Assembly (NCBI GenBank): GCA_002269645.1
Contig: NIVC01000224.1
Span: 277,127-341,126 of the forward strand
DNA from: Macrostomum lignano
Lineage: Eukaryota
Length of the DNA stretch: 64,000 nucleotides
Reading direction: 5' to 3'
The notes under the pieces are model-generated. The model did not search any database. It saw only the letters and a program-made list of their open reading frames with translations, and was not told the origin of the DNA. Shown one piece after another: positions 11,326 through 64,000 of this stretch. Each line of letters opens with the position of its first letter. Position 1 is the first letter of the stretch. The translations under genes were made by a program, and so were the position numbers.

Positions 11326-13540
11326 TTGACGCCTAACTTAGTAGAGTTGGCGCTTAATTTAGTAGAATTGGCGCTTGATTTAGTAGAGTTGGCGCTTAAT
11401 TTAGAAGAATTGGCGCTTAATTTAGTAAAATTGGCGCTTGATTTAGTAAATTTGGCGCTTAATTTAGTAGAATTGGCGCTTAATTTAGTAGAATTGGCGC
11501 TTAATTTAGTAGAATTGGCGCTTAATTTAGTAGAATTGGCGCTTAATTTAGTAGAATTGGCGCTTAATTTAGTAGAATTGGCGCTTAATTTAGTAGAATT
11601 GGCGCTTAATTTAGTAGAATTGGCGCTTAATTTAGTAGAATTGGCGCTTAATTTAGTAGAATTGGCGCTTAATTTAGTAGAACTGGCGCTTAATTTAGTA
11701 GAACTGGCGCTTAATTTAGTAGAATTGGCGCTTAATTTAGTAGAACTGGCGCTTAATTTAGTAGAACTGGCGCTTAATTTAGTAGAATTGGCGCTTAATT
11801 TAGTATAATTGGCGCTTAATTTAGTAGAACTGGCGCTTGATTTAGTAGAATTGGCGCTTAATTTAGTAGAATTGGCGCTTGATTTAGTAGAACTGGCGCT
11901 TAATTTAGTAGAATTGGCGCTTAATTTAGTAGAATTGGCGCTTGATTTAGTAGAATTGGCGCCTAATTTAGTAGAATTGGCGCTTAATTTAGTAGAATTG
12001 GCGCTTAATTTAGTAGAATTGGCGCTTAATTAAGTAGAATTGGCGCTTAATTTAGTAGAATTAGCGCTTAATTTAGTAGAATTGGCGCTTAATTTAGTAG
12101 AATTGGCGCTTAATTTAGTAGAATTGGCGCTTGATTTAGTAGTATTAGCGCCTAATTTAGTAGAATTTGCGCATAATTTAGTAGAATTGGCGCCTAATTT
12201 AGTATAATTGGCGCTTAATTTAGTATAATTGGCGCTTAATTTAGTAGAACTGGCGCTTAATTTAGTAGAATTGGCGCTTAATTTAGTAGAACTGGCGCTT
12301 AATTTAGTAGAATTGGCGCTTAATTTAGTAGAATTGGCGCTTGATTTAGTAGAGTTGGCGCTTAATTTAGTAGAATTGGCGCTTGATTTAGTAGAACTGG
12401 CGCTTAATTTAGTAGAATTGGCGCTTAATTTAGTAGAATTGGCGCTTAATTTAGTAGAATTGGCGCCTAATTTAGTAGAATTGGCGCTTAATTTAGTAGA
12501 ATTGGCGCTTAATTTAGTAGAATTGGCGCTTAATTTAGTAGAATTAGCGCTTAATTTAGTAGAATTGGCGCTTAATTTAGTAGAATTGGCGCTTAATTTA
12601 GTAGAATTGGCGCTTGATTTAGTAGAATTAGCGCCTAATTTAGTAGAATTTGCGCATAATTTAGTAGAATTGGCGCCTAATTTAGTAGAACTGGCGCTTA
12701 ATTTAGTAGAATTGGCGCTTAATTTAGTAGAACTGGCGCTTAATTTAGTAGAATTGGCGCTTAATTTAGTAGATTTGGCGCTTAATTTAGTAGAATTGGC
12801 GCTTAATTTAGAAGAATTGGCGCTTAATTTAGTAGAATTGGCGCTTAATTTAGAAGAATTGGCGCTTAATTTAGTAGAATTGGCGCTTAATTTAGTAGAT
12901 TTGGCGCTTAATTTAGTAGAGTTGGCGCTTAATTTAGTAGAATTGGCGCTTAATTTAGTAGAATTGGCGCTTAATTTAGTAGAACTGGCGCTTAATTTAG
13001 TAGAATTGGCGCTTAATTTAGTAGAATTGGCGCTTGATTTAGTAGAGTTGGCGCTTAATTTAGTAGAATTGGCGCTTGATTTAGTAGAATTGGCGCTTAA
13101 TTTAGTAGAATTGGCGCTTAATTTAGTAGAATTGGCGCCTAATTTAGTAGAATTGGCGCTTAATTTAGTAGAATTGGCGCTTGATTTAGTAGAATTGGCG
13201 CTTGATTTAGTAGAATTGGCGCTTAATTTAGTAGAATTGGCGCTTGATTTAGAAGAATTGGCGCTTGATTTAGTAGAATTGGCGCTTGATTTAGTAGAAC
13301 TGGCGCTTAATTTAGTAGAGTTGGCGCTTAATTTAGTAGAGTTGGCGCTTAATTTAGTAGAACTGGCGCTTAATTTAGTAGAACTAACGCTTAATTTAGT
13401 AGAGTTGGCGCTTAATTTAGTAGAATTGGCGCTTAATTTAGTAGAACTGGCGCTTAATTTAGTAGATTTGACGCCTAATTTAGTAGAATTGGCGCTTAAA
13501 TTAGTAGAATTGGCGCCTAATTTAGTAAAATTGACTAGAT
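11326..13540. repeat. 21-bp minisatellite, about 105 copies, upstream of CEP70
   Basis: Unit ttggcgcttaatttagtagaa. Confidence 0.97.
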
Positions 13541-14870: not shown

Positions 14871-17729
14871 ATGACAAGGCAGTTTCTACTAACAGTCTTT
14901 GTTCTTGCAGTCGCTGTTTGTGCATCGTACTGCTTGCAATCTACTTTCGATGCGACAATTGACGAAGACATACCGCAGGATTCTGAGCTGCCCGACTCGA
15001 GAATACTACTGCACAACAATGGCATCGATTCGAACTCTTATCAACTGCTGCCGCACCCCTACGTGACATTCGACAAGGAATCCGGTTTACTAAAAGCCAA
15101 GAAGACACTCGATCGAGATGTTATGTGTCAAAATGATAAACTTTGCTGCGAAAATGACAGATTAATCTGTCAGTTGGACCTGACATTTATTAGCCACCGG
15201 ACAACCCCGCTGCAGAGAAAAGTTCTCCGCGTCGGGCTAAGAGATCGAAACGATCATACTCCGCGCTTCGAGACGGCTTCAAAGGCGTTCTTCATTCCGG
15301 AGGACACTCAGCCTGGACACTTGGAACGGTTGCCAGTGGCAACGGACTTGGACTCGGACGAGAATGCGGTGCAGCGGTACATTCTCATGCCAGACAGCTC
15401 GCCGTTCGGTCTAAAACACGAGAGCTCGCGCAGTCGCGGCAGTCGAGCAAACGGTCAGCTCTGGTTGGAGCTGAAGACGCCGCTTGACCGAGAGACCACA
15501 GCCTCGTACGAATTCGTTTTGACAGCGATCGATTCCGGAGAGCAGAAAGGCAGCACGCGGATCATTGTCAACGTGACAGATCGCAACGATATTTATCCGC
15601 ATTTCGAGCGCAGCAGCTCCAGAGGCCAGACAATACGATTGCTTGAGAGTAGGAAACCCAACGCTATCGTTGCTCGAGTTGTTGCTAAGGACGAAGACGA
15701 AGGTGTCAATGCTGAGATTCTGTACGAGTTGGACCCGCATCAGGCCGATCTGAGCGCCATCCAGCGACACTTCCGGGTCGATTCTACTCGAAGCACCGGA
15801 AATGTTGTGCTAATACGCCAGCTGGACTATGAAGAGGCAACAGAGTACAAGCTGGCTATTATTGCTCGAAATAGAGTGCCATACAGTACTCGCAACCGAC
15901 TCTCAACTGCTACCGTGACTATCATTGTGCTTGACGATAATGACGAAACTCCTGTAGTCAGCGTGCACTACTTGACAGACGAAGGTCAGCACATGGCCAG
16001 CATAGTGGAGAACCAAGCGGAATCAATGACGGTAGCAATAATAACTCCAGCTGACCGAGACAAGGGACTCAACGGCCAGGTTACGTGTGAAATTCTTGAC
16101 ACCAAAGATCGGGAACACTTCACTTTGAAGAAAATTTTGCCAGGAGTCGAGTACTACTTGCGCACTAAAACTGGACATGGACTGGATCGCGAAGAGTTTC
16201 TGAGAAACCCATCTATCAACCCATCGGTAACCGAGGTCCAGATCAAAGTGCGGATAATGTGCAGCGATCACGGTACGCCGCAGAGAAGTGCAAACACGAG
16301 TGTCAATATCCGCATTCTGGACCTCAACGATAACAGTCCAATGCTCAAGGTGCACGCTGTGCTCGGGAAAAGCTCGCTAAGCGACGCTAAAACAGTCGAA
16401 ATCGCTGAGAACCTGTCGCCAAATACAGTTTTCGCGACAGTAAGCGCGCTGGATCCGGACTATCGGGAAAACGGCACAGTGGTGTTCTCAATGGACCAAC
16501 AGAATTTGTATCCGTTTGAGGCTTTCGGTATCTATAATAATGGCCATATTTTCATCCGGCGGGCGCTGGATCGAGAAACGCTCAACCTACCTGGCGACCT
16601 TTTTCAAATAGTTGTAGTTGCTCGAGACAAAGGCACGCCGGCCAGGTCCAACTCGATTAACCTGGAGATTCGTCTCAAAGACGTGAACGACAACAAGCCC
16701 CAGATGGAGCAGCGCATGACTTTCACGGTGTTTGAGAACAACTCGACTGGATATCCTATCGGCGAGATTAACGTCACCGATCCCGACAAGGTTGGCCAAC
16801 TGTCCTTGACGTTGCAGCCTCTGAGATTGCTGGATCGACTGCCGTTTCAAGTACTTGAAGAGCACGGCAGGTTTTATCTGCAGGCTACTGACAGCTTGGA
16901 CAGCGAGAGGGTGAGTGAGTTCCAGTTCCTGCTGGTGGCCAGGGATGCCGGTCACGGTTCGGCTGGACACACGGTCACCAGCACGGTGACCGTAGTTGTT
17001 CAGGACGTCAATGACCACTCGCCGCAGATTGTGTACCCCTGCAATGGTAAAGCGCGTCGGTATAACCACACAGTCTCTTGGAAAGAGGGCATCGGACACA
17101 CGGTGGTGAAAGTTAATGCCAAGGACGATGATCATGACAAAATGACTAACGGGCGCCTTCAATTCAGCATGCTACGAAACAGCCTGTTAAAGATTGACGA
17201 AGACACTGGCGAGGTGCAAGTGGCCGTGAAAATGGACTACAGAAGCATCGGGCCAAAGCTTGTCACCGTGGTGGCCAAGGATCATGGCAAGCCGAAGAGT
17301 CTGAGCTCCACCTGCGAATTCTTCATCCTCGTTGACGACTCGGTGCCGTACAGTCGAGTGGTAGACAGCGGAGGTGGGAGCAGAACGCGCAATCCGTTAA
17401 ACGGTGTCAGACGCGACGGTGACGTCATCAATCGCGGCTCCCTGCTGACTGACTCGAGCGTTCTAGCCGCGATAGCGGTCTTTGTCTGCCTCCTTCTGCT
17501 GGCCACTCTGCTGTTGTTTCTGTACGCCAGGCACTGGCACAGGACGCCGGAGTTTCTGCCGGACCTGCTCGAGCCGTGTCTGGGGCCGGTGCAGCCTGCG
17601 GCGACAATCAAGCACAGCGCCGAGGCTGGCGAGGAGATTCAACAGGCGTCCTCGACGCTACAGCCAGGCTCGCGGAGGCTGCTGTCTACTGGAGGGACTT
17701 TCGGCAAGGCGGGAGGCGACCTGACTGAG
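14871..17729 (+). CDS. Protocadherin, exon 1: signal peptide, 7 cadherin repeats, transmembrane helix
   Basis: Hydrophobic N-terminus; six DxND linkers plus LDRE/AxDxD motifs; C-x5-C in EC1; TM SVLAAIAVFVCLLLLATLLLFLYA; donor GAG|gtaagg, phase 0. Confidence 0.95.
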
Positions 17730-18069
17730 GTAAGGCGTTGCCGTGTTGCCGTGAAAGCGCGTTGATAAGTTGCTGGATGGTCTTTTAGGGTGAGCTAAAG
17801 GAAAGATCGTAGGCAGAATGGATGAATAGAAACTTATGTAAACCAGATGTTTCTGCCTAGCAGGTGTTTTAGACTTCGAACAGAAAGAGACACTCTGGAG
17901 ACCCAAAATGAAAAGTTCCAATCCGATACGAACAACTGAGAAAGAGACTGCCACAGATGGCTAAATAGAACCTTAGTTTGTTTAATCAATGTCCTATTTT
18001 CGCGCAAATTTAAACTACAAGTAGCTGACGAGCTTGAGTGGCACCTGTCTAGCATTATCCGAGAGACTT

Positions 18070-28282: not shown

Positions 28283-28440
28283 GCCGAGCGCGCGTTTAGA
28301 CAATGGTGCTTTCCGGATTGTAGCGAGCGTAAATCATATTAAAAACATTGAATTTTTAGGCAGTAAATTTTTTGTTGGTTAATAAGCTTTCCCTCTGAAA
28401 ATAACTTTGACTGAACTTCTAAACCATATTAAATTTTTAC

Positions 28441-30597
28441 CCCAGTCCCCGCGTAGCCACCAACCCCCTCAAACACCCCAGCCACCGCGTAGCCACCAAC
28501 CCCCTCAAACACCCCAGTCCCCGCGTAGCCACCAACCCCCTCAAACACCCCAGTCCCCGCGTAGACACCAACCCCCTCAAACACCCCAGTCACCGCGTAG
28601 CCACCAACCCCCTCAAACACCCCAGTCCCCGCGTAGCCTCCAACTCCCTCAAACACCCCAGTCCCCGCGTAGCCACCAACCCCCTCAAACACCCCAGTCC
28701 TTGCGTAGCCACCAACCCCCTCAAACACCCCAGCCCTTGCGTAGCCACCAACCCCCTCAAACACCCCAGTACTTGCGTAGCCACCAACCCCCTCAAACAC
28801 CCCAGTCCCCGCGTAGACACCAACCCCCTCAAACACCCCAGTCCCCGCGTAGCCACCAACCCCCTCAAACACTCCAGTCCCCGCGTAGCCACCAACCCCC
28901 TCAAACACCCCAGTCCCCGCGTAGCCACCAACCCCCTCAAACACCCCAGTCCCCGCGTAGACACCAACCCCCTCAAACACCCCAGTCCCCGCGTAGCCAC
29001 CAACCCCCTCAAACACCCCAGCCCTTGCGTAGCCACCAACCCCCTCAAACACCCCAGTCCCCGAGTAGCCACCAACCCCCTCAAACACCCCAGCCCTTGC
29101 GTAGCCACCAACCCCCTCAAACACCCCAGTCACCGCGTAGCCACCGACCCCCTCAAACACCCCAGTCCCCGCGTAGCCACCAACCCCCTCAAACACCCCA
29201 GTCCCCGCGTAGCCACCAACCCCCTCAAACACCCCAGTCCCCGCGTAGCCACCAACCCCCTCAAACACCCCAGTCCCCGCGTAGCCACCAACCCCCTCAA
29301 ACACCCCAGTCCCCGCGTAGACACCAACCCCCTCAAACACCCCAGTCACCGCGTAGCCACCAACCCCCTCAAACACCCCAGTCCCCGCGTAGCCTCCAAC
29401 TCCCTCAAACACCCCAGTCCCCGCGTAGCCACCAACCCCCTCAAACACCCCAGTCCTTGCGTAGCCACCAACCCCCTCAAACACCCCAGCCCTTGCGTAG
29501 CCACCAACCCCCTCAAACACCCCAGTCCCCGCGTAGACACCAACCCCCTCAAACACCCCAGTACTTGCGTAGCCACCAACCCCCTCAAACACCCCAGTCA
29601 CCGCGTAGCCACCAACCCCCTCAAACACCCCAGTCCCCGCGTAGCCACCAACCCCCTCAAACACCCCAGTCCCCGCGTAGCCACCAACCCCCTCAAACAC
29701 CCCAGTCCCCGCGTAGCCACCAACCCTCTCAAACACCCCAGTCCCCGCGTAGCCACCAACCCCTCAAACACCCCAGTCCCCGCGTAGCCACCAACCCCCT
29801 CAAACACCCCAGTCCCCGCGTAGCCACCACCCCCTCAAACACCCCAGTCACCGCGTAGCCACCAACCCCCTCAAACACCCCAGTCCCCGCGTAGCCTCCA
29901 ACTCCCTCAAACACCCCAGTCCCCGCGTAGCCACCAACCCCCTCAAACACCCCAGTCCTTGCGTAGCCACCAACCCCCTCAAACACCCCAGCCCTTGCGT
30001 AGCCACCAACCCCCTCAAACACCCCAGTACTTGCGTAGCCACCAACCCCCTCAAACACCCCAGTCCCCGCGTAGACACCAACCCCCTCAAACACCCCAGT
30101 ACTTGCGTAGCCACCAACCCCCTCAAACACCCCAGTCCCCGCGTAGACACCAACCCCCTCAAACACTCCAGTCCCCGCGTAGCCACCAACCCCCTCAAAC
30201 ACCCCAGCCCTTGCGTAGCCACCAACCCCCTCAAACACCCCAGTACTTGCGTAGCCACCAACCCCCTCAAACACCCCAGCCCTTGCGTAGCCACCAACCC
30301 CCTCAAACACCCCAGTCCCCGCGTAGCCACCAACCCCCTCAGACACCCCAGTCCCCGCGTAGCCACCAACCCCCTCAAACACCCCAGTACTTGCGTAGCC
30401 ACCAACCCCCTCAAACACCCCAGCCCTTGCGTAGCCACCAACCCCCTCAAACACCCCAGTCCCCGCGTAGCCACCAACCCCCTCAAACACCCCAGTCCCC
30501 GCGTAGCCACCAACCCCCTCAAACACCCCAGCCCTTGCGTAGCCACCAACCCCCTCAAACACCCCAGTCCCCGCGTAGCCACCAACCCCCTCAGACA
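28441..30597. repeat. 36-bp C-rich minisatellite, about 60 copies
   Basis: Unit cccagtccccgcgtagccaccaaccccctcaaacac. Confidence 0.97.
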
Positions 30598-31678
30598 CTA
30601 GAGTCCTCTGAACAACTTAGGCAGTCACATCGCCCGTCGGTTAAAGTTACGCAGGCATTCAAAGAAGAGCATTGAGCACTTCACACATGCGCCAATATTT
30701 CTTTCTACAGCACAATCAAAAATACGATCATGTTACTACGTGTACAGCTTGCAAAATTGTTTAACCTGCACATTCACTGGTTTAAAAAGTGTTGTTAAAA
30801 TTATGTTAATTAGTTAAGCTGCATCGAAAAAACTACTTTCTGTAACTATATTATTATACTATAATATAATTGGTTACTTAAATTCTCTGCTCCTTTCTGC
30901 ACTTTTTTTCTAAAAGTACACACTTCACTTTAACACATTGTATTTCATTGTTTGTCACAAAGTTTTTTTTCTTACATTTGAAATTAAATCAAATTAGGTT
31001 GTCAGAACGTAAATTGAATTTGCTGACTGAAATATAAACTTTTTTTTATTTATGTAATACTTATAATTCTTTAGTGCAAGTTATGATACATCGGGAAATA
31101 CCCGATTTGAGAGATTTGGGATCAAATGAAAATCTTCAAGTGTAAATTAAAAGATACAGAACTTTGCACTTTGCATCGTCCGAAACATCCATAAACATCA
31201 ATACAAACCTTTGGAAACATCGTCCCACAGTTCTGAGACAACACGCTCCTTGGTTGCAAGAATTTAACTTAATACAAAATACAGTGAAATATTCAAAGTT
31301 GAGAGTTGAAACGCAATGAGATGAAGTTCAATCATGAAGTTTCCATGCACCACACACCATGCAGTTTCTCATTCTGTTGAGAAATAAAAAAATTTTATAA
31401 TTCTTCTGCGCAGAACTTGCGCAGCGCAGAAGGCTGAGTGAAAGTTCCGAACTTATAAACCGCAGTCGTATAGTTGTTAGCCCTCCACTCGAAAGCTCTT
31501 TTAAACTGCTGACTTTCAAAAACTGTGTCTCTACTATGTGCGATCTTGCAGTTGGGAAAAATTCTTTTCCAAGTGTCAGTTCGAAATTTGATTTTTTTCA
31601 ATGCATTCAGAAATGAATTTCTGAAGATTTTTGAAGCACTGATGCAAAATCTTTCTTTAGGCTCATCCATATCTAAAA

Positions 31679-43467: not shown

Positions 43468-44176
43468 GCGTGGTGGTCTTGGCCGGAGCCCTGCTGGAAC
43501 AAGCTGATGTACTGCTAGACAAGGGCATTCACGCTACACGAATCGCCGAAGGCTACGAGCAAGCCGCCGCCATTGCTATTCGTCATCTGGAGTCCATCGC
43601 TGACAAGTTCGAGTTTAGCCGCGATAATAAAGAGCCACTGATCGAGACCGCCATGACCACCCTGGGCTCGAAGATTATCAACCGGTTGCACCGGAAGTTC
43701 GCCGAGATCGCTGTCGACGCTGTCCTATCCGTGGCCGACTTTGAGCGCAAAGATGTCGACTTTGAATTGATCAAAGTTGAAGGCAAAGTTGGCGGCAAAC
43801 TGGAAGATTCTATGCTAATCCGAGGGGTCTTGGTGGACAAAGACATGTCCCATCCGCAGATGCCCAAGCGCGTGTCCGATGCTCGCATTGCCATCCTGAC
43901 CTGCCCGTTTGAGCCGCCAAAGCCCAAGACTAAGCATTCGCTTCTGGTGCAAACTGTTGAAGACTATGAGAAATTGCGCGAGTATGAACACAATAAATTT
44001 GAAGAGATGGTCGACCAGGTGAAGGCTACTGGCGCTAATCTGGTTATCTGTCAGTGGGGCTTCGACGATGAGGCCAACCATCTGCTGTTGCACAAGCAGC
44101 TGCCCGCCGTTCGCTGGGTTGGCGGCCCAGAGATTGAACTTATTGCTATTGCAACTGGCGGCAGGATTGTGCCCAG
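43468..44176 (+). CDS. CCT5: CCT5 exon 3
   Basis: [13 protein letters not shown]...[15 protein letters not shown]...[13 protein letters not shown]...[23 protein letters not shown]. Confidence 0.97.
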
Positions 44177-44214
44177 GTCAGTTTGGGGGAGAAGATTTGA
44201 TGGTTATGGTTGAT

Positions 44215-49782: not shown

Positions 49783-50422
49783 ATCCATCGAACTACTGAA
49801 GCCTCATCAAGAATTAAAGCAACAATTGCACCGAGAATTCGGCTTCAATTATTGGATTGAACGAAACTACAGCCTGTCCCAGTATCATTTTGTACGATCT
49901 AGCGATGCCGGCTATCATTTCGGTCGCATGCTAGTGGAGTACAGTGAGTTAGGTTACAAATCCGAGGTCGACTTGTTCCTTGCCCTCACCGTGTTGCAAT
50001 TGTTGTGCTTAAAAAAGCTATCGCCAGCATCCGTGTGCTTCTACACGTACACTCGACATCATCCGAGTCTGCTTAGGACTCAAGCGCCGCCTTATCCGTC
50101 AAATTATCCGTTGTTAAATTTCACCTGGCTATTATTAATGTCTATTCGTTCCAATTGGCCGCTGTCGTGTTTTCAATACCTGTGCCAGGTGTACAGGGCA
50201 CCGCTAGATCGGGATCCAATCTGTGGTGAATATCTCATCAAAATTAGTCAGCTTTTCTTCGGCGTACCAGCTGAGAAGACTGACCAGTCTGGTGGATTCT
50301 TTGGTAGTATTATGCGAATGCTCGCTACTGATGATGCGGCTCTGGATGCTGAGGATGCGGAGGGGTCGGATCCCGGCGCCAACCACAATGCTGTCTCGTT
50401 GAAGGCTGACGATATGGACTGA
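49783..50422 (+). CDS. GET4: GET4 exon 2 with stop
   Basis: ctactcag|A completes Lys; LHREFG...ERNYSLSQYHF...GYKSEVDLF...PLLNFTWLLL...YL.KISQLFFGV. Total 963 nt. Confidence 0.9.
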
Positions 50423-50541: not shown

Positions 50542-51168
50542 GCCAGCCTCCCAGATCCTCAGTTGCTGGGCCAGCCTCCCAGATCCTCAGTTGCTGAGCC
50601 AGCCTCCCAGAGTGTCAGTTGCTGGGCCAGCCTCCCAGATCCTCAGTTGCTGGGCCAGCCTCCCAGAGTGTCAGTTGCTGGGCCAGCCTCCCAGATCCTC
50701 AGTTGCTGGGCCAGCCTCCCAGAGTGTCAGTTGCTGGGCCAGCCTCCCAGATCCTCAGTTGCTGTGCCAGCCTCCCAGATCCTCAGTTGCTAAGTCAGCC
50801 TCCCAAATTCTCAGATGCTAGGCCAGCCTCCCAGATCCTCGGTTGCTGGGCTAGCCTCCCAGGTCCTCACTTGCTGGGCCAGCCTCCCAGATCCTCAGTT
50901 GCTAGGCCAGCCTCCCAGATCCTCAGTTGCTGAGCCAGCCTCCCAGATCCTCAATTGCTAAGTCAGCCTCCCAAATTCTCACTTGCTGGACCAGCCTCCC
51001 AGATCCTCAGTTGCTGGGGCAGCCTCCCAGATCCTCAGTTGCTGGGCCAGTCTCCCAGATCCTCAGTTGCTGGGCCAGCCTCCCAGATCCTCAGTTGCTG
51101 GGCCAGCCTCCCAGGTCCTCACTTGCTGGGCTAGCTTCCCAGGTCCTCGGTTGCTGGACCAGCCTCAG
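50542..51168 (+). repeat. 28-bp minisatellite, left copy
   Basis: Unit gctgggccagcctcccagatcctcagtt. Confidence 0.95.
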
Positions 51169-54457: not shown

Positions 54458-56341
54458 TTATGCAATCAAACACTTTGAACGTTTCCGATGCCTCAACTTT
54501 CTCACCGGCTTGAGCACACAGATTCGTCGCCTAGTGCACACCAGGATTTTGTCCTCGCCCAGCGGCGCTATCCCAGTGATCTCGTCCAGCTCCTGTAGAA
54601 ACTGCAGCCGCTGGACGAAAATGAACTCGCTCCTTCTGATCACCCAGAACAGCCTCTGGCGCTGGTTATCCGTGAAGATAATTCTCTTGTCGCTTGTAGT
54701 GATGATATGCGCCGGTACTGAATCAAAGATCTGAGTTGTTGTCAGCTTTCTGTACACTCCGGTTCTGTCATTCACAATCAGGATGTGACCTTCTGCTGGG
54801 CAGGAGACCCACAGCATCTTGCGCTCGCGTGTCCAGGTGACGTACTGCGGATGCAGATTCTCGAACGTGAACCAGTGCCCCGTGCGGCCCAGGCAGGGGG
54901 TGAAGAACTCCACTTTCTGATCCGACGGCTGCGCCACCACCATGTCGCCGCGTCGACTGTCGACGAAGAAACCGGCAAACAGCGGCTCGTCTCTGCTGCC
55001 ACCGGGCCGTTCGATCCGTTTGACCACCTGACCGTCCAGCTGCAGACAGGCGACCACGGATAACCAGCCAGTTGGGGCTCCCGTAGAGTCTGCAGCTTGC
55101 TGCTGCTGCTGCTGCTGCTGAGCCACTCCGCTGACATAAACCAGACCGTTCACCAGCCGCATGTGATGGCACTGCAGCCTGCCTCCCGGGTTCGAATCTC
55201 CAATCAGCACCGGCAGGTCTTTGATTTGGCCTTCCTGGCTAGAATAGACTAGCAGCGATCTTGAGCAGCTGTTCAGCAGCACCAGCTCCGCCTGGTCAGT
55301 TGAGCCATCCGCGTCAGCCAGCAGTCCGGCCGCACCGATCTCCAGTTCGCCGCGAGTCGATTGGAGCAGATCGGCGCAGGCTCCCATGTCGATCTCCTTC
55401 ATCTTGTAGCTGCTATTTCGCTTCATATTGTGCCTGATGAAGCTCAGATCCAGGGCGTCCTCAGCATCCGAGCTGTCGCTGCCACCGCCGCCACCGCCGC
55501 CGCCGCTGCCGCTTCGAATTTCGTCAAGATCGACATCGTTGAGGTGGTCGTTGACGGTCGGGTAGCGAGCTGCGGCAGCGGACGCGGCGCCGAACTGATG
55601 ATGATGCTGGTGCGCTCCAGCTGTCGCCGCCTCCATTGCGTCCTGCAGTTTCTGCGAGCGACTCTCCGCGTCGTCCAGCCGAGTGATCAACTTGTTGAGA
55701 TTCTCGCGGACCGCCAGCAGCTCGGCCTTGTCGAATTCGCTCATCAGCGACATGCCGGCGCCGCCGCCCAGACCACCGGCTCCGACCTCCTCAGAGCGTC
55801 GGACAAAATCCTCGGCCAGATGGGCCAGGATCTCCTGCTTGCGCTCCAGGCTGCGCTTCCGGCTGCCGCCGCCGCCGCTGCCGCCGCTGAAGACGCCGCT
55901 GCTTCGACCTCTCGGACTGCCGATGCTCGAGGCGACTGCGGCAGCGGCATCGGCTGCGGCAGCAACTGCCGCAGCAGCTCCACCCTCGGTTGAGGCCTCT
56001 CCGCCGCTGCCGCTGCCACGGCTGCCGCCGCCGCCAGGTAACTGCAGCCTGCGACACTGCCTGTCTACAATGTACTTGATGATCGACTGGTGCACATGCG
56101 CCGGCGGCAGGCAGCGCAGACCCCCCGCTGGTAGTCGGGCTTCAACGCGGCATAGCGGACAGGGGAATCTATCTCTGCTAGGCTGCTGGCTGTCCCACTT
56201 CTCCAGGCAGGTGAGGCAGAACACGTGAGAACAGTTGAGCAGTTTGGGCTCGTGCAGACGGCCCAGGTGAATCGGGCAGGTGGTCAGGTCTTCCAGGGAT
56301 TCGATGCTGCCGCTGCTAGAGGACGAACTGGCGCAGCCGGG
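54458..56341 (-). CDS. RING finger, coiled coil and NHL-like beta-propeller protein (TRIM-NHL-like, no B-box), probable E3 ligase with CaaX tail
   Basis: CPIH-x11-CSH-x2-C-x2-C-x14-CPLC RING; coiled coil LLAVRENLNKLITRLDDAESRSQKLQDAME; short beta-strand repeats (FFVD..GDMVVA, MLWVSC..GHILIV, RIIFTDN..RLFWV); ends RKLRHRKRSKCLIA*. Confidence 0.88.
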   Translation of the reverse strand, partial: PGCASSSSSSGSIESLEDLTTCPIHLGRLHEPKLLNCSHVFCLTCLEKWDSQQPSRDRFPCPLCRVEARLPAGGLRCLPPAHVHQSIIKYIVDRQCRRLQLPGGGGSRGSGSGGEASTEGGAAAAVAAAADAAAAVASSIGSPRGRSSGVFSGGSGGGGSRKRSLERKQEILAHLAEDFVRRSEEVGAGGLGGGAGMSLMSEFDKAELLAVRENLNKLITRLDDAESRSQKLQDAMEAATAGAHQHHHQFGAASAAAARYPTVNDHLNDVDLDEIRSGSGGGGGGGGSDSSDAEDALDLSFIRHNMKRNSSYKMKEIDMGACADLLQSTRGELEIGAAGLLADADGSTDQAELVLLNSCSRSLLVYSSQEGQIKDLPVLIGDSNPGGRLQCHHMRLVNGLVYVSGVAQQQQQQQQAADSTGAPTGWLSVVACLQLDGQVVKRIERPGGSRDEPLFAGFFVDSRRGDMVVAQPSDQKVEFFTPCLGRTGHWFTFENLHPQYVTWTRERKMLWVSCPAEGHILIVNDRTGVYRKLTTTQIFDSVPAHIITTSDKRIIFTDNQRQRLFWVIRRSEFIFVQRLQFLQELDEITGIAPLGEDKILVCTRRRICVLKPVRKLRHRKRSKCLIA

Positions 56342-56685
56342 CTGCAAGTAAGACCATTGACGTAAGGGGTTACAGGGTTGATAATATTGAGTTACTATTG
56401 AGTAGCCCAGCGATAATATTGCACTAAGAAATTGGCAAACCAACTGAAACAAGCTACTTAGTTATTCCCGGTTGTAAGTAGTATCTGATATGATACGAGC
56501 CATTTAGTTAATTGTTCTTTGCCTGCTTGTATACTCTTTAATGATCCAAAGATCTCATACTCTCGTAGAAGATAGAGGGATGAGGAATAGAAAATTTGGT
56601 TGTCGTTGAGAAGTTTTTTTCTTTATTGATTTTTATTTATAACTTTGACAGAGATTATATTAGATGTCATCAATTCCCGATACTG

Positions 56686-57705
56686 AAACTGGGGATCTGG
56701 AACTGGGGATCTGGAACTTGGGCTCTGGAACTGGGGATCTGAAACTGGGGATCTGAAACTGGGGATCTGAAACTGGGGATCTGAAACTGGGGATCTGAAA
56801 CTGGGGATCTGAAACTGGGGATCTGAAACTGGGGATCTGAAACTGGGGATCTGGAACTGGGGATCTGAAACTGGGGATCTGAAACTGAGGATCTGGAACT
56901 GGGGATCTGAAACTGGGGATCTGGAACTGGGGATCTGGAACTGGGAATCTGAAACTGGGGATCTGAAACTGGGGATCTGAAACTGGGGATCTGAAACTGG
57001 GGATCTGAAACTGGGGATCTGGAACTGGGGATCTGGAACTGGGGATCTGGAACTGGGGATCTGGAACTGGGGATCTGGAACTGGGAATCTGAAACTGGGG
57101 ATCTGAAACTGGGGATCTAAAACTGGGGATCTGAAACTGGGGATCTGAAACTGGGGATCTGAAACTGGGGATCTGGAACTGGGGATCTGAAACTGGGGAT
57201 CTGAAACTGGGGATCTGGAACTGGGGATCTGGAACTGGGGATCTGGAACTGGGGATCTGGAACTGGGGATCTGGAACTGGGGATCTGAAACTGGGGATCT
57301 GAAACTGGGGATCTGGAACTGGGGATCTGAAACTGGGGATCTGTAACTGGGGACCTGGAACTGGGGATCTGGAACTGGGGATCTGGAACTGGGGATCTGG
57401 AACTGGGAATCTGAAACTGGGAATCTGAAACTGGGGATCTGAAACTGGGGATCTGAAACTGGGGATCTGAAACTGGGGATCTGAAACTGGGGATCTGGAA
57501 CTGGGGATCTGGAACTGGGGATCTGAAACTGGGGATCTGAAACTGGGGATCTGAAACTGGGGATCTGAAACTGGGGATCTGAAACTGGGGATCTGAAACT
57601 GGGGATCTGAAACTGGGAATCTGGAACTAGGGATCTGGAACTGGGGATCTGGAACTAGGGATCTGGAACTGGGGATCTGGAACTGGATCTAACTGGGGAT
57701 CTGGA
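56686..57705. repeat. 14-bp minisatellite (RING gene intron)
   Basis: Unit ctggggatctg(a/g)aa. Confidence 0.96.
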
Positions 57706-58539
57706 TCTAGAAAAGAAATTACTTTTCCTATCTTGGACAGCTGTTGCTAGGAATTTAGGATTTTCGCATGCTCATGCTACTAAATCAGCTTGTAAATAGT
57801 AGTGCACGGAACAAGATTGCAAGGTAGAAATGTGTCCTGCCAGAGGAACCGCAGCACACACACACCATTAATTAGGAATGCAATGTTTTGTATGTATCAG
57901 ACAGCCATATAAAGCATGAACATGCTTGTAATTTAATAGCTACATTCTGCGAGTAAATGAACCCCTTCAAACTCTTATAACGAGGCTATCGTTAGGGCTT
58001 GTTAACTAAAGCCATTAGCCGGAGCTGTTGTGTTGAATGCTTGTCTAATTGGGGAACATAAGAGAGACTATCGACACTGGGAATGTTGCATGAACTCTAT
58101 TCTCAAGGCTCAACTTGGCCTTTTTTCTCACAGTTTTTTTCTTTAGATTGATGAAGAGTTACATGCAGCCTACAAAGAAACCGGTTTTTACCAGCTACCT
58201 ACTACACGTACTAAACAGTTTACATAGTACATAGTAAACTTGAAATGAGATGGTCTGCAGCAAAGAGCATGCGAAACTCTCTCTATGTGTATGTTTTTGG
58301 TACTGAATATAGAAATTATTCTCTACATTTATTGGAGAGACCAAACTCTGTTTACCCGAGCTCTGCACTGCAACTTTGTATTGATTCTTCCCACGAGTCG
58401 ATGCAACAGAAGCGGCAGTGCGTGGACAATATATATTCCACACGTTTCGTTTGATTGAGTTTTCTGTGTGCGTGCGTGTGCCGATTCTGTTTTGTGTATG
58501 ATATTTTCGTTATTTATGTACTTTTGCAACTGAAGTGAG

Positions 58540-59155
58540 ACGAGAGAGAGGAGGGAGAGGGAAAGGAAGAGAAGGGATAGTGAAGGGAGAGAGAAGAGGA
58601 GAGGGAATCAAGAGAATGCAGGAGAGAAGGAGAGAGAAGGGGAGAGGGAAGGGAGAGAAGGAAAGAGAAGGGAGGAGAAGGGCGAGATAGAAGAGAGAGA
58701 AGGAAAGAGAGAAGGGACAGAAGGGAGAGAGAATATGGAGAGAAGGGGAGAGAATGATGAGAAGGGGAGAAGGGGAAAGAGAAGGAAAGAGAGAAGGGAA
58801 ATAAGACGAGAGAGTATTGAGAGAAGGGGAGAAAGAAAGAGAGAAAGGGGAGAGAGAGAGAAGGGAGGGAAGGAGAGAAAAGGGAGAGAGAGAAGGGAGG
58901 GAAGGGATAGAAAAGGGAGAGAGAGAAGGGAGGGAAGGGAGAGAAAAGGAAGAGAGAGAAGGAAGGGAAGGGAGAGAGAAGGGAGGGAAGGGAGAGAAAA
59001 GGGAGAGAGAGAAGGAAGGGAAGGGAGAGAAAAGGAAGAGAGAGAAGGAAGGGAAGGGAGAGAGAAGGGAGGGAAGGGAGAGAAAAGGGAGAGAGAGAAG
59101 GGAGGGAATTGGGAAAGAAGGGACAGGGGGGAGAGAAGAGAGAAAAGGGAGGGAC
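58540..59155. repeat. GA-rich polypurine tract
   Basis: About 600 bp, almost purine-only. Confidence 0.9.
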
Positions 59156-59741
59156 ATGAACACAATGGAGCAATCCAGCTTTACCAGCTCAAATACGACG
59201 TAAATATCAGTGTGCAGCAGTGTTAGCAACTGAAACGCATGCAGTGCTTATAGATTTTTTAAAACTAATTCTAACTGATATAGACAGTATAAAAACAGAA
59301 CCTATAGCTACATGTAATTTTTTACAGGTATAGACAAGCACTTGGCTTGAATTCAGCGATATACTCGCGTAGTTACAATCGAAACAATAGCAAACAAATT
59401 CTACCTAGATATAGAATTGAACTCTAACCCGAAGCCCTGTTCTGCGTGTGCTATAGCTAGAACTGATAAGAATTCCCCTACAAGTCCAACTCTTGTCTCT
59501 CATTTTTGTCTGTTCTAAAAGAAGATTGCAGAAATAAAAAACTAATCTGTGTGTTTGTGTGTGTGTGCGTCTGCATTGCGGTGACCCCGTCAGCCCTTTG
59601 GTATCAGCAAATTTCAATGCACAATGGACTTGCTTTGCTAGACTAAAAGATAAGGTGTTTACTATCGGATAGACTCCAGGTCAAGACTGCAGAAACCCGA
59701 ATGAACTATAACAGGCTTTGGTTAAACAACTTCTGCTTATT

Positions 59742-60400
59742 CAGGTTGGATTGGGGGAATTCTGGTTGGATTGGGGGAATTCAGGTTGGATCAGGGGAAT
59801 TCAGGTTGGATTGGGGGAATTCAGGTTGGATTGGGGGAATTCAGTTTGGATCGGGGGAATTCTAGTTGGATTGGGGGAATTCTGGTTGGATTGGGGGAAT
59901 TCTGGTTGGATCAGGGGAATTCAGGTTGGATTGGGGGAATTCAGTTTGGATCGGGGGAATTCTAGTTGGATTGGGGGAATTCTGGTTGGATCAGGGGAAT
60001 TCAGGTTGGATTGGGGGAATTCAGGTTGGATTGGGGGAATTCAGGTTGAGTTGGAGGAATTCTGGTTGGATCAGGGGAATTCAGGTTGGATTGGGGGAAT
60101 TCAGGTTGGATTGGGGGAATTCAGGTTGAGTTGGAGGAATTTAGATTAAATTTGAGGGGCTTCAGATTGAATCGGAGGGAATTCAGATTGAACCGAGGGA
60201 ATCGAGATTGAACTATGGGAATTCAGATTGAACCCGGGGAGTTCAGATTGAACCCGGGGAGTTCAGATTGAACCGGGGGAATTCAAATTGAACCGAGGGA
60301 ATTCAGATTGAACCGGGGGAATTCAGATGGAACCGGGAGAATTCAGATTGAACCGGGAGAATTAATATTAAACTGGAGGGATCATTCAATTTGAACCGAG
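59742..60400. repeat. Two abutting related 20-bp minisatellites
   Basis: ttgggggaattcaggttgga changes into gaaccgggggaattcagatt at ~60140. Confidence 0.9.
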
Positions 60401-60562
60401 GGAATTAAGAATGAATTTTGATAAATTAAACTACTTGAAGAATTTACCGCAATCCTTTATAGTACCGTTAAGAAGGTTCCGAAGAGTATAAATGAAAATA
60501 CCCCCTTAGCAACCAGATTAACATAGCAGAATAGCAAGCATAGAGTGGTAGCCATCATCTAC

Positions 60563-60628
60563 CTGATCGCAGACGCAGGACGTTGAAGAGCCAGCTGCAT
60601 CATCCGCGGCTTCGCAATCGCTTTCCAT
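60563..60628 (-). CDS. RING-propeller gene, probable first coding exon (MESDCEAADDAAGSSTSCVCDQ)
   Basis: GC-rich ATG-initiated 66 nt ending CAG|gtagat, phase 0; compatible with the cttacttgcag| acceptor at 56342. Confidence 0.6.
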
Positions 60629-60925: not shown

Positions 60926-61696
60926 ACGCGTGTACTCAGTTACACCTCTCACCCTCCACTTCTCCTCTCTACCCAACCCCCCCCCCCTGTATTTCAGTTT
61001 GTAGTTAAGGCGAGGGAACTGCGTGTGTTCTCTCCTCTCCTCTCCTCTCCTCTCCTCTCCTCTGTCTCCGCGCTCTGGGTTGGTGGCAATCAAGTAGTAC
61101 AGCTCGTTAGGTCAAACCAATAGTTAGGATCTGCTATACACCAGCGCGTACTATTAGGCCTTGGTAGTAGTGCTGCCTGCCTATTGGCTAATGCCGCATT
61201 GGGGGAGAGACAGACAGAAAGACGGAGTACGCGGCAGGCTTGTGTGTTTCTCCCTTTCTCTCTCTCTCTCTCTATCTCTCTCCCCTCTCCACTGCCCATA
61301 GTCCAGTTGCAGGCGCAGATATACAGGCCCTATACCACACGATGCTGCTACGCATATAAACATTCAGATAGAATGATAGATGAAATGCACACAGCACACT
61401 TAGATGGAGTCTGCCGGGTTGGACCGATCGTGTCCTTAAAACCCCGGTGTGTTTCCGGGGGAGCAGGAATTCTGTGCTGTTTATAGGTTTCCCCAGAGAA
61501 CATTTGAAAATAAAATTGCAGTGGCTACAAGTAACAGCTGGGGCTAAATTATTTTATGTTGCAGGATCTTTTTTTACAGCTGTCTTGGTTTTGTTTACAC
61601 TGCGAACAATTTATTGGTAGGGTAATAAAAGTACATGGCAGTAAATACCTATAAACTTATGGCTTAGTAACTTTATAATCTGGGAGTGTAGCGGGT

Positions 61697-62775
61697 GGCC
61701 CAGCAACTGAGGATCTGGGAGACTGGCCAAGCAACTGAGGATCTGGGAGGCTGGCCCAGCAACTGCATGAGGATCTGGGAGGCTGGCCCAGCAACTGAGG
61801 ATCTGAGAGGCTGGCCTAGCAACTGAGGATCTGGGAGGCTGGCCCAGCAACTGAGGATCTGAGAGGCTGGCCTAGCAACTGAGGATCTGGGAGGCTGGCC
61901 CAGCAACTGAGGATCTGAGAGGCTGGCCTAGCAACTGAGGATCTGGGAGGCTGGCCCAGCAACTGAGGATCTGAGAGGCTGGCCTAGCAACTGAGGATCT
62001 GGGAGGCTGACCCAGCAACTGAGGATCTGGGAGGCTGGCCCAGCAACTGAGGATCTGGGAGGCTGGCCCAGCAACTGACACTCTGGGAGGCTGGCCCAGC
62101 AACTGAGAATCTGGGAGACTGGCCCAGCAACTGAGGATCTGGGAGGCTGGCCTAGCAACTGAGGATCTGGGAGACTGGCCCAGCAACTGCATGAGGATCT
62201 GGGAGGCTGGCCCAGCAACTGAGGATCTGAGAGGCTGGCCTAGCAACTGAGGATCTGGGAGGCTGGCCCAGCAACTGAGGATCTGAGAGGCTGGCCTAGC
62301 AACTGAGGATCTGAGAGGCTGGCCTAGCAACTGAGGATCTGGGAGGCTGGCCAGCAACTGAGGATCTGGGAGGCTGGCCCAGCAACTGAGGATCTGGGAG
62401 ACTGGCCCAGCAACTGAGGATATGGGAGGCTGGCCCAGCAACTGACACTCTGGGAGACTGGCCCAGCAACTGAGGATCTGAGAGGCTGGCCTAGCAACTG
62501 AGGATCTGGGAGGCTGGCCCAGCAACTGAGGATCTGGGAGGCTGGCCCAGCAACTGAGGATCTGGGAGACTGGCCCAGCAACTGAGGATATGGGAGGCTG
62601 GCCCAGCAACTGACACTCTGGGAGACTGGCCCAGCAACTGAGGATATGGGAGGCTGGCCCAGCAACTGACACTCTGGGAGACTGGCCCAGCAGCAACTGA
62701 GGATCTGGGAGGCTGGCCCAGCAACTGAGGATCTGGGAGACTGGCCCAGCAACTGACACTCTGGGAGACTGGCCA
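61697..62775 (-). repeat. 28-bp minisatellite, right copy (inverted relative to 50542-51168)
   Basis: cccagcaactgaggatctgggaggctgg is the reverse complement of the left-array unit, including the shared 'agagtgtcag' variant. Confidence 0.95.
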
Positions 62776-64000
62776 AGCAAAAATGCCTTTGTCAAAAATG
62801 CCTTTCTTCTAGCCTTCAAAGTATGCTCATTAGGCATCGAACCGTGTAAATGCATTGAAGCATATCAGATTGCAGAAGCAAGCACAGAGTAGACTGTACT
62901 TCCCTGTCCTTGACAACCAGAGGAGAGAGAGAGAGTTATGCATTCATGGGAGCTGATAGCAATGCTGGCAGAGGCGTGTAGCCCCCCTCAGCCAGGGCTA
63001 TTCCAGTGCAGCCTCTATTTACACAGCTGTCTACGCATATAAAGAAGTCTTGGCATGCTTGTAAAGTAATGTCAACTCTCCTCAACTGTTTTATTGCACG
63101 TCAGCAGATCACAGTAATGTGTGTCTTGTATTATTCTTCAAGCTATATAGTCTTACGTGTTCGTATATAGAATTATTTTACTGCATATATACTTTTTGGT
63201 TTAAAAGCATTACACTGAGTTGGTCATTTCCGTCTACAGAGGCTAAGTGTCTCGATTTTTTAGCGGTTTGCATAAATAATTTAAAGATTTCCACGCGGTC
63301 CTTTTATACAATACTCATCTGAGACTGTGCAGCATTTGTGATGGGAATCCAGAAAAAAAATCCAACATTTCACCTCCTTTTACGCTTGAATAAATATTCC
63401 GCCTGTAATAAATATCCCCCACTGTTGCAAAACATCGGGGGGGAGAGATCTGTCCCAATCTGCAGATTTCGTCTCTTATGATGGTCCGTGTGTTGAATTC
63501 TTGATGGGAGTTGAGAATTTTGCCATCTCCTAATCCTATCGGCCGTCTGTGACCGATAGGATGGCGATTAGCATGCGTGTCTGCAGGCCGCCAAAGCGCG
63601 GGTTCCGGAACGCAACAGCTGGTTTTGGAATAAAAATGCTCAGCTTCATAACAAAATGCAGCTATGGAAGAGAAGCAAATGGGTAGATAGTGAATTAATC
63701 CCCCAGCTTCATCTGCAAAGAGCAGCTGGAGAAGAGCAAAATGAGCCGGTCCTGTCATGCAAAAAATGAAAACCTCTTACAGTTCAAAATCCACATGTTT
63801 TCTTTGACAGCTCTCTGTCATCAAGTAGAAAGCCAGAGTGCAGTGCAACACGCGACTCGGCTCAAGAAAAAGTCATTTCAAATCAACTGGAAATTTAATC
63901 AGCAAGACGAGCAACGATCTCGTCATCCAATGAGAGCGCCCTACTAATAATAATATTTATTCCTGGCCCAGAGCTATAGTTCAGCCACATCAAAGCTAGG

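What the first reader, a model, noticed from the sequence alone, without database searches (positions are those of the whole stretch)
54458..54520. RING-coiled coil-propeller E3 candidate ending in a K-Ras-like polybasic CaaX tail
Seen: the ORF ends ...ICVLKPVRKLRHRKRSK-CLIA-stop, i.e. a run of basic residues directly before C-a-a-X (X=Ala), with another Cys 16 residues before the CaaX Cys. Established: polybasic plus CaaX is the K-Ras4B plasma-membrane targeting signal, and X=A favours farnesyltransferase. Prenylated ubiquitin-ligase components exist (FBXL2), but canonical TRIM-NHL proteins (Brat, LIN-41/TRIM71, TRIM2/3/32) are soluble and have B-boxes. Inference: a lipid-anchored, B-box-less RING-propeller ligase acting at membranes, possibly a lineage-specific family. 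I do not know of this architecture.
Basis: partly seen in the sequence, partly recalled or inferred. Interest (0 to 1): 0.7.

Follow-up and report, generated by a model that had tools for sequence, protein, structure and literature searches.

The report
Prenyl-tailed RING–propeller ligase family in flatworms
This Macrostomum lignano gene encodes a probable ubiquitin ligase (RING finger plus six-bladed NHL-like propeller) ending in a lipid-attachment (CaaX) signal that recurs in most of a previously undescribed flatworm protein family, so it probably works tethered to membranes.

Summary
On the minus strand, exon 2 (56341..54458) ends ...ICVLKP-VRKLRHRKRSK-CLIA-stop. The gene has two exons (ATG at 60628) and comes from the flatworm Macrostomum lignano.

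The tail is coding, not intron read-through.
- A paralogue with saturated synonymous sites keeps the same codon count to the stop.
- It also keeps 8 of 11 basic residues and the Cys at -4 (CDLM).
- DNA similarity drops to random right after the stop.
- The GTGAGA donor look-alike is not conserved.

The family appears restricted to flatworms, and 12 divergent lineages end in C-x-[ILVF]-[LMAS]. That pattern matches prenyltransferase specificity.

AlphaFold and Foldseek show a confident six-bladed NHL-type propeller with a disordered tail. No B-box is present. The RING is TRIM-like, with an unusual His/Asp second zinc ligand.

The strong polybasic tract occurs only in two M. lignano paralogues. 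The upstream Cys is not conserved. The coiled coil is only two short helices of modest confidence. Trematode and cestode members have non-canonical Cys-rich tails.

Prenylation, membrane localisation and ligase activity remain untested. This is an undescribed combination of known modules and is moderately interesting.

The parts
60563..60628 (-). Exon 1: ATG plus 22 codons (MESDCEAADDAAGSSTSCVCDQ), followed by the donor CAG|GTAGAT
   Evidence: tblastn of P0001 residues 1-22 at 100% identity. Junction read. The near-identical locus L002 has the same structure.
56342..60562 (-). Intron of about 4.2 kb, full of minisatellites, ending in the acceptor ...CTTACTTGCAG|
   Evidence: arrays at 56683-57703, 58537-59148, 59739-60417.
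54458..56341 (-). Exon 2: 627 codons plus the TAA stop. It encodes the RING, linker helices, propeller and tail.
   Evidence: The protein is 99% identical to the transcript-derived GenBank model BOX15_Mlig023823g1.
56147..56278 (-). RING finger, C-x2-H-x11-C-x-H-x2-C-x2-C-x15-C-x2-C-R. The second zinc ligand is His instead of Cys, and the Arg after the last Cys is invariant.
   Evidence: Pfam hits. TRIM-family RINGs are the best PDB matches. Family columns, invariant residues.
55622..55861 (-). Two conserved helices (exon-2 residues 161-191 and 205-240) flanked by disordered Gly/Ala/Ser-rich linkers. This is a possible short coiled coil or helical hairpin.
   Evidence: Full-length AlphaFold model, pLDDT 50-70 in this region. 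Conserved motifs.
54506..55411 (-). Six-bladed NHL-type beta-propeller (24 strands), preceded by a capping helix
   Evidence: AlphaFold pLDDT 86.7 and pTM 0.86. Foldseek top hits are the NHL domains of TRIM71, Thin, Brat, Mei-P26, TRIM2 and NHL-2.
54473..54505 (-). Polybasic linker VRKLRHRKRSK (7 K/R plus His in 11 residues), predicted disordered
   Evidence: Paralogue B has TRKLRRRRRPR with five synonymous codon changes. Charge table.
54461..54472 (-). CaaX box C-L-I-A
   Evidence: Cys at -4 is conserved in most of the family. C-x-I-A motifs score as farnesylated and fully processed in the yeast screens.
54458..54460 (-). TAA stop codon. Paralogue B stops at the same codon position; paralogue C has a linker two residues longer.
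54500..54505 (-). GTGAGA, a splice-donor look-alike at the start of the basic tract, judged not to be a donor
   Evidence: It reads ACGCGT in paralogue B and AGCAGA in paralogue C. No candidate exon lies downstream.

Best explanation
The gene encodes a 649-residue RING-type ubiquitin ligase of a family that appears specific to flatworms.

Its parts, from N to C terminus, are:
- a TRIM-like RING that would recruit an E2;
- a short helical region that may mediate self-association;
- a six-bladed NHL-type propeller that would bind the substrate or another ligand;
- a disordered tail ending in CLIA.

The likely mechanism is as follows. Farnesyltransferase prenylates the tail Cys. The tail is then probably trimmed and carboxymethylated, because the a2 residue is aliphatic. 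The adjacent run of basic residues adds electrostatic attraction to acidic inner-leaflet lipids. This is the two-signal arrangement used by K-Ras4B and by Rho and Rac GTPases. It would place the ligase on the cytoplasmic face of the plasma membrane, where it would ubiquitinate membrane-proximal targets.

Across the family the prenyl signal looks ancestral, mostly of the geranylgeranyl type (X = Leu). The second signal varies by lineage: polybasic in M. lignano paralogues A and B, an adjacent extra Cys in others, and remodelled Cys-rich tails in trematodes and cestodes.

Shown here: gene structure, domain folds, coding status and conservation of the tail. Inferred: prenylation, processing, membrane targeting, E3 activity and the nature of the substrates.
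For: Gene model and coding status.
- The GenBank model that ends at the same stop is transcript-derived.
- Paralogue B keeps the exact codon count to the stop, with synonymous changes in the Arg, Leu and Cys codons.
- DNA identity between the window and paralogue B is 74% in the propeller, 48% in the tail and 22% after the stop.
- Synonymous sites are saturated, yet dN in the propeller is 0.076. The window copy differs from its near-identical copy by 11 synonymous and 3 non-synonymous changes.

CaaX conservation.
- Tails are CLIA, CDLM, CELL, CNFL/CNIL, CVVM, CNIL, CRIL, CNLL, CNVL, CNLS and CSLL, in lineages at most about 40% identical in the propeller.
- a1 is free, a2 is always I/L/V/F, and X is L/M/A/S. 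This matches the published specificities of FTase and GGTase-I.
- CDLM scores 3.48 against the cut-off of 3. C-x-I-A motifs score 3.97-4.99, with high Ras-type scores of 11-15.

Other support.
- The tail is disordered in both models.
- Flatworms encode FTase, and S. mansoni Ras is reported to be farnesylated.
- RING. The Arg after the last Cys and the C-P-I and C-P-x-C motifs are conserved.
- Propeller.
Against: - There is no biochemical or localisation evidence at all.
- CLIA itself could not be retrieved from the yeast dataset because the stored file is cut.
- The polybasic tract is absent from paralogue C and from the other species, so plasma-membrane targeting cannot be generalised to the family.
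- Trematode and cestode members lack a canonical CaaX (CGKL, CSF, FSC, CSWPS), so the anchor is dispensable or replaced in those lineages.
- The second RING zinc ligand is His or Asp rather than Cys, and its effect on activity is unknown.
- The NHL relationship is not significant by sequence (E = 0.1; no Pfam NHL hit).
Confidence: 0.7

Rival explanations
1. The tail is an artefact. The true mRNA splices at the GTGAGA that begins the basic tract, so VRKLRHRKRSKCLIA is translated intron.
For: CCG|GTGAGA fits the 5' splice-site consensus, and the tail is more AT-rich than the rest of the exon.
Against: - The hexamer reads ACGCGT and AGCAGA in the two paralogues, which still continue to a CaaX and a stop.
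- Paralogue B keeps the same frame and length despite saturated synonymous sites.
- Similarity collapses only after the stop.
- The deposited gene models are transcript-derived.
- An uninterrupted, transcript-like contig from another organism also ends in CVVM-stop.
- No coding-like exon lies downstream.
Confidence: 0.03
2. The conserved terminal Cys serves a purpose other than prenylation, for example S-acylation alone, metal or disulfide chemistry, or a C-terminal degron or recognition motif.
For: Trematode and cestode members keep Cys-rich tails that are not canonical CaaX. This suggests the Cys may matter more than the exact box. No modification data exist.
Against: In 12 lineages the Cys sits exactly at -4, a2 is always I/L/V/F and X is limited to L/M/A/S, while a1 varies freely. 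This is the signature of FTase and GGTase-I selectivity, and none of the alternatives predicts it.
Confidence: 0.12
3. The protein is prenylated, but the basic tract acts mainly as a nuclear or nucleolar signal or as an RNA-binding extension. The protein would then work at the nuclear envelope or on endomembranes rather than at the plasma membrane.
For: - Basic tracts next to CaaX boxes can double as nuclear localisation signals, as known for Rac1 (from established knowledge, not tested here).
- The closest structural matches are NHL propellers, several solved in complex with RNA.
- Most family members lack a strong second signal, which by the two-signal rule predicts endomembrane residence (literature cited).
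Against: A net charge of +8 or +9 directly next to a farnesyl-type CaaX is the classical plasma-membrane signal. It is kept in paralogue B through K/R-preserving substitutions.
Confidence: 0.15
4. The RING is catalytically dead, so the protein is a prenylated scaffold or adaptor rather than a ligase.
For: The second zinc ligand is His (or Asp in the parasites) instead of Cys, across the whole family.
Against: - His and Asp can both coordinate zinc.
- The other seven ligands are invariant or nearly so (the first Cys in at least 90% of members).
- The Arg after the last Cys is invariant, and the C-P-I and C-P-x-C motifs are largely conserved.
- All 13 members hit the Pfam RING models zf-C3HC4_4, zf-RING_UBOX and zf-C3HC4 at E-values below 0.1, and the window protein exceeds their curated cut-offs.
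- The RING models at pLDDT about 90.
Confidence: 0.1

Closest known systems
TRIM-NHL proteins (TRIM2, TRIM3, TRIM32/Thin, TRIM71/LIN-41, Mei-P26, NHL-2; Brat lacks the RING)
   Same: The RING is most similar to TRIM RINGs. A helical region follows it. The C-terminal six-bladed propeller has NHL domains as its best structural matches.
   Different: - No B-box.
- The helices are far shorter than a TRIM coiled coil.
- No significant NHL sequence match.
- The second RING ligand is His or Asp.
- There is a C-terminal CaaX. No report of a prenylated TRIM-NHL was found.
NHLRC1 (malin)
   Same: By recollection, malin also has a RING followed directly by an NHL propeller, without a B-box.
   Different: By recollection, malin has no CaaX tail. 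Homology was not shown: the sensitive search with the propeller found only flatworm or unnamed sequences. No direct comparison was made here.
Prenylated F-box receptors FBXL2 and FBXO10
   Same: They are ubiquitin-ligase components targeted to specific membranes by a conserved C-terminal CaaX. FBXL2 adds palmitoyl Cys residues next to the box as a second signal (PMC9988375, PMC11573457).
   Different: Those proteins are substrate receptors of cullin-RING complexes and have no RING of their own. Here the catalytic RING and the substrate-binding propeller sit on the same prenylated polypeptide.
K-Ras4B and Rho/Rac-type C-terminal targeting signals
   Same: A disordered polybasic stretch lies directly before a CaaX box, giving the two-signal membrane-targeting logic (literature cited).
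   Different: The signal is attached to a ligase rather than a GTPase. Within the family the polybasic part is limited to two M. lignano paralogues.

Membership tests
RING-type E3 ubiquitin ligase | Cross-brace RING with eight zinc ligands | tested here: met
   Pfam RING models above their cut-offs. Seven canonical ligands plus His or Asp at ligand 2. Modelled at pLDDT about 90.
RING-type E3 ubiquitin ligase | E2-dependent ubiquitin transfer activity | not testable with these tools
   Only indirect support: the Arg after the last Cys is invariant and the C-P-I and C-P-x-C motifs are conserved.
TRIM (tripartite motif) / TRIM-NHL | B-box zinc finger after the RING | tested here: not met
   No Pfam B-box hit in any of 13 members. 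Only two Cys lie between the RING and the propeller. That region is disordered or helical in the model.
TRIM (tripartite motif) / TRIM-NHL | Long antiparallel coiled coil | tested here: inconclusive
   Two helices of 31 and 36 residues at pLDDT 50-70. No dimer modelling was done.
TRIM (tripartite motif) / TRIM-NHL | NHL-repeat six-bladed propeller | tested here: inconclusive
   Met at fold level: 24 strands, and NHL domains dominate the Foldseek hits at probability 1.00, TM 0.55-0.68. Not met at sequence level: no Pfam NHL hit, and TRIM71 only at E = 0.1.
CaaX prenylated proteins | Cys exactly four residues from the C-terminus, permissive a2 and X residues | tested here: met
   The box is CLIA. 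C-x-I-A motifs score 3.97-4.99 on the Ydj1 scale (cut-off 3) and 11-15 on the Ras scale. CLIA itself is not in the stored part of the dataset.
CaaX prenylated proteins | Flexible, accessible linker before the box | tested here: met
   The last 10 residues have pLDDT below 50 in both models.
CaaX prenylated proteins | Motif conserved in homologues | tested here: met
   Twelve lineages carry a canonical box. The exception is the trematode and cestode clade, plus one monogenean fragment.
CaaX prenylated proteins | Covalent isoprenoid on the Cys | not testable with these tools
   This needs labelling or mass spectrometry. The machinery exists in flatworms.
K-Ras4B-type polybasic second signal | Cluster of at least six Lys/Arg immediately upstream of the CaaX | tested here: met
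   7 K/R plus His in 11 residues. Paralogue B has 8 of 11. Not met in paralogue C or in other species (net charge -1 to +4).

The most novel reading that the evidence does not exclude
Flatworms have a phylum-specific class of ubiquitin ligases in which the catalytic RING, an NHL-type propeller and a prenyl membrane anchor sit on one polypeptide. The membrane 'second signal' has diversified between lineages: polybasic, an adjacent Cys, or remodelled Cys-rich tails in the parasites. This would retarget the same ligase chassis to different membranes. If the propeller binds RNA, as several NHL domains do, this would be a membrane-tethered RNA-binding ligase.
Probability: 0.45. Interest if true: 0.65.

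Novelty: new variant of a known kind. Interest (0 to 1): 0.55.

Why it matters
The lipid-anchored ligase parts found in the literature searched here are F-box receptors of cullin complexes (FBXL2, FBXO10). A self-contained RING-propeller ligase with its own conserved prenyl anchor would be a different way to confine ubiquitination to a membrane.

The family appears limited to flatworms. These include a transgenic regeneration model (M. lignano) and medically important flukes and tapeworms. It therefore offers two things:
- a tractable system for studying how second signals evolve next to a CaaX box;
- a lineage-specific protein whose biology could be explored in parasites.

It also shows that the propeller escapes current Pfam NHL models.

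Tried and rejected
- The bacterial-code ORF start was rejected in favour of a two-exon model.
- Intron read-through at GTGAGA was considered first and rejected on paralogue codon evidence.
- The word-indexed homologue search was weak. The single sequence found only 2 proteins, the domain profile A2 found 4, and the trimmed core profile A4 found none. The family was recovered only by the exhaustive phmmer search.
- Sequence searches of the propeller against PDB and Pfam gave no significant NHL hit.
- Literature searches found nothing for a prenylated TRIM-NHL, a prenylated RING ligase, or the M. lignano gene IDs.
- The CLIA, CVVM, CNIL and CGKL scores could not be read from the yeast CXXX dataset because the stored supplement is cut. 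Neighbouring motifs were used instead.
- The upstream Cys as a palmitoylation site was rejected: it is Tyr in the paralogue and lies inside the last beta-strand.
- The organism behind run SRR33002330 and the other unnamed contigs could not be identified.
Full report
**Observation**

The reported coordinates lie on the minus strand. Window 54520..54458 reads C-V-L-K-P-V-R-K-L-R-H-R-K-R-S-K-C-L-I-A-stop. The mechanical ORF list gives 54458..56452 with a TTG start, but that start is not real. No ATG precedes the RING, and a splice acceptor (CTTACTTGCAG|) ends at 56342.

A homologue search identified the organism as Macrostomum lignano. It returned a 99%-identical annotated protein (P0001, BOX15_Mlig023823g1, 646 aa) and a paralogue at 55% identity (P0002, BOX15_Mlig004309g3).

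Mapping P0001 onto the window gives a two-exon gene. Exon 1 is 60628..60563, with the ATG, 22 codons and the donor CAG|GTAGAT. Exon 2 is 56341..54458. The protein is 649 residues long. Both annotated relatives have the same layout: a short first exon and one large second exon running to the stop.

**Is the tail coding?**

The basic tract begins exactly at CCG|GTGAGA, which looks like a splice donor, so intron read-through was the first rival I tested. The evidence is against it.
- In paralogue B the hexamer reads ACGCGT, and in paralogue C it reads AGCAGA. Both genes still continue to a CaaX box and a stop.
- Paralogue B has exactly the same number of codons from K-P to the stop. Five codons differ synonymously (AGA/CGT, TTG/CTG, AGG/CGA, CGT/CGA, TGT/TGC), and three replacements keep the basic character.
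- Ungapped DNA identity between the window and paralogue B is 74% in the last 150 nt of the propeller, 48% in the 54-nt tail, and 22% (random) in the 150 nt after the stop.
- Synonymous sites between A and B are saturated (pS 0.65-0.82), so the duplication is old. Propeller dN is still only 0.076.
- The window copy and its near-identical copy differ by 11 synonymous and 3 non-synonymous changes. One of the synonymous differences is in the Ile codon of CLIA (ATT in the window, ATA in the other copy).
- The GenBank annotation of this assembly was derived from a genome-guided transcriptome that used poly(A) and trans-splicing evidence (PMC5730564).
- An uninterrupted, transcript-like contig from another organism also ends in ...CCVVM-stop.
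- Nothing downstream of the stop looks like an exon. The region is AT-rich and repetitive.

**The family**

An exhaustive phmmer search with the C-terminal 333 residues found 15 cluster representatives. Every one that carries a name is a flatworm:
- three paralogue groups in M. lignano;
- Trichobilharzia, Opisthorchis/Clonorchis and Fasciolopsis (trematodes);
- Spirometra/Sparganum (cestodes);
- Cichlidogyrus and Protopolystoma (monogeneans).

The rest are unnamed contigs. Two of them come from a single sequencing run, so that organism also has at least two paralogues.

The tails are as follows.

| Lineage | Tail |
|---|---|
| Window gene and P0001 | CLIA |
| M. lignano paralogue B | CDLM |
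| M. lignano paralogue C | CELL |
| Unnamed contigs and database entries | CNFL/CNIL, CCVVM, CNIL, CRIL, CNLL, CNVL, CNLS |
| Protopolystoma | CSLL |

In these 12 lineages, which are at most about 40% identical in the propeller, the pattern is consistent. a1 is free (L, D, E, N, V, R, S). a2 is always I, L, V or F. X is L, M, A or S.

This is the published selectivity pattern of the CaaX prenyltransferases: tolerance at a1, restriction at a2 and X, and X = Leu for GGTase-I (PMC10320760 and PMC11304957). In the yeast FTase dataset:
- CDLM scores 3.48 (cut-off 3), with a Ras-type score of 11.4;
- CELL scores 4.15 and 1.04, as expected for a GGTase-I type box;
- C-x-I-A boxes score 3.97-4.99 and 11-15.

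CLIA itself lies beyond the stored part of the file.

Flatworms encode FTase, and S. mansoni Ras is reported to be farnesylated (PMC6548881).

**Exceptions and second signals**

The trematode and cestode members end in Cys-rich tails that are not canonical...SCLNLCGKL...SCLRLCSF...DCTSIFSC and ...GCCSWPS. One short monogenean sequence, probably a fragment, has no Cys at all.

The strong polybasic tract is confined to M. lignano paralogues A and B, with net charges of +8 and +9. All other members range from -1 to +4. Some lineages instead carry an extra Cys next to the box (CCVVM, CECNFL). This resembles the palmitoyl second signal of FBXL2 (PMC9988375).

**Domains**

All 13 full-length members hit the Pfam RING models zf-C3HC4_4, zf-RING_UBOX and zf-C3HC4, and the window protein exceeds their curated cut-offs. 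None hits the B-box or NHL models. The best solved-structure matches to the RING are from TRIM30, 39, 5, 56, 2 and 3.

The second zinc ligand is unusual. It is His in the Macrostomum-type sequences and Asp in most parasite sequences. The other seven ligands are invariant or nearly so, the Arg after the last Cys is invariant, and the C-P-I and C-P-x-C motifs are largely conserved. From established knowledge of RING-E2 complexes, these features are expected of an active ligase. That is an inference, not a test.

AlphaFold on the 15-sequence domain alignment gave pLDDT 86.7 and pTM 0.86, with 24 strands (six four-stranded blades) and a disordered last 10 residues. Foldseek against the PDB returned, at probability 1.00, the NHL propellers of TRIM71/LIN-41, Thin, Brat, Mei-P26, TRIM2 and NHL-2. 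It also returned other six-bladed NHL-type propellers (virginiamycin B lyase, YncE, Pizza6), with TM 0.5-0.68 and 12-16% identity. By sequence alone, the family profile reaches the TRIM71 NHL domain only at E = 0.1.

The full-length model shows these features, in exon-2 residue numbers.

| Residues | Feature | Confidence |
|---|---|---|
| about 17-80 | RING | pLDDT about 90 |
| 82-99 | Helix after the RING | not assessed separately |
| 96-163 | Disordered Gly/Ala/Ser linker | pLDDT below 50 |
| 161-191 and 205-240 | Two helices | pLDDT 50-70 |
| 228-294 | Second disordered stretch | pLDDT below 50 |
| 290-308 | Capping helix | pLDDT about 90 |
| 311-612 | Six-bladed propeller | mostly pLDDT 85-96 |
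| 618-627 | Tail | pLDDT below 50 |

There is therefore no B-box, and the coiled coil is at best short and unproven.

**Mechanism**

The best-supported reading is a self-contained RING ligase whose propeller binds the target and whose C-terminus is prenylated. For this gene, CLIA predicts farnesylation followed by -LIA removal and methylation. The adjacent basic tract would supply the electrostatic second signal for the plasma membrane, as in K-Ras4B and Rho/Rac GTPases (two-signal literature cited). For most relatives, X = Leu predicts geranylgeranylation, and the lack of a strong second signal predicts endomembranes by default. All steps after 'the motif is conserved' are inferred.

**Comparison with known systems and novelty**

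The protein resembles TRIM-NHL ligases in its RING type and propeller fold. It fails the B-box criterion, so it is not a TRIM.

Its layout recalls malin (RING plus NHL), but that comparison is from memory and no homology was detected.

Its membrane logic parallels FBXL2 and FBXO10. Those are F-box receptors without a RING of their own.

I found no report of a prenylated TRIM-NHL or RING-propeller ligase, and none mentioning these gene IDs. These searches cover only the held library, so they are not exhaustive.

I rate this a new variant of known kinds: an undescribed, apparently flatworm-specific family that combines known modules in a new way. Interest is moderate. The conservation evidence is strong, but function is inferred, and each module is individually familiar.

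Noticed in passing
window 56267-56269 (His codon); family columns in alignment A3: The second zinc ligand of the RING is His (C-P-I-H) in M. lignano and the free-living-type members, and Asp (C-P-I-D) in most trematode and cestode members. It is never Cys. This is a family hallmark whose effect on zinc binding or activity is unknown.
   Followed up: partly
window 50542-51166 and 61696-62780: The same 28-bp minisatellite unit (GCCAGCCTCCCAGATCCTCAGTTGCTGG and its reverse complement) forms arrays on both sides of the gene, in inverted orientation. They lie about 3.3 kb past the stop and about 1 kb upstream of exon 1.
   Followed up: no
whole window, e.g. 7540-10720, 11324-13533, 28439-30598, 56683-57703: The window is dominated by dozens of minisatellite arrays with periods of 4-160 bp, up to 3 kb each. 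Most long 'ORFs' in the mechanical list lie inside them, and three arrays sit in the gene's own intron.
   Followed up: partly
window 49826-50422 (+): This is the last exon of a GET4 homologue (Pfam PF04190, E = 2e-34), convergent with the RING gene. The same neighbour is annotated beside the near-identical copy (L002), so the two copies share synteny.
   Followed up: partly
window 43470-44213 (+): An exon encoding part of a TCP-1/cpn60 chaperonin (PF00118, E = 2.5e-65).
   Followed up: no
window 14871-17765 (+): A 964-aa open frame with six cadherin repeats and a FAT4-like N-terminal cadherin domain. It is probably a large exon of a protocadherin or FAT-like gene.
   Followed up: no
P0009, P0010, P0013, P0014, P0017, P0027 (trematodes and cestodes): Parasite members have a longer propeller with inserts. 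Their tails carry two Cys in the last 8 residues but no canonical CaaX (SCLNLCGKL, SCLRLCSF, DCTSIFSC, GCCSWPS). This suggests the anchor was remodelled or lost in that clade.
   Followed up: partly
L003 and L005 (Logan run SRR33002330): One unidentified organism carries at least two family members, with different tails (CCVVM and CNLL). The DNA just upstream of the called start in L005 encodes the beginning of the RING, so that gene call (P0008) is N-terminally truncated.
   Followed up: partly
window exon 2 compared with P0001: The window copy differs from the annotated near-identical copy mainly by length changes in Gly and Gln runs (two extra Gly, one extra Gln), plus three amino-acid substitutions. 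This is consistent with the duplicated genome blocks reported for M. lignano.
   Followed up: partly
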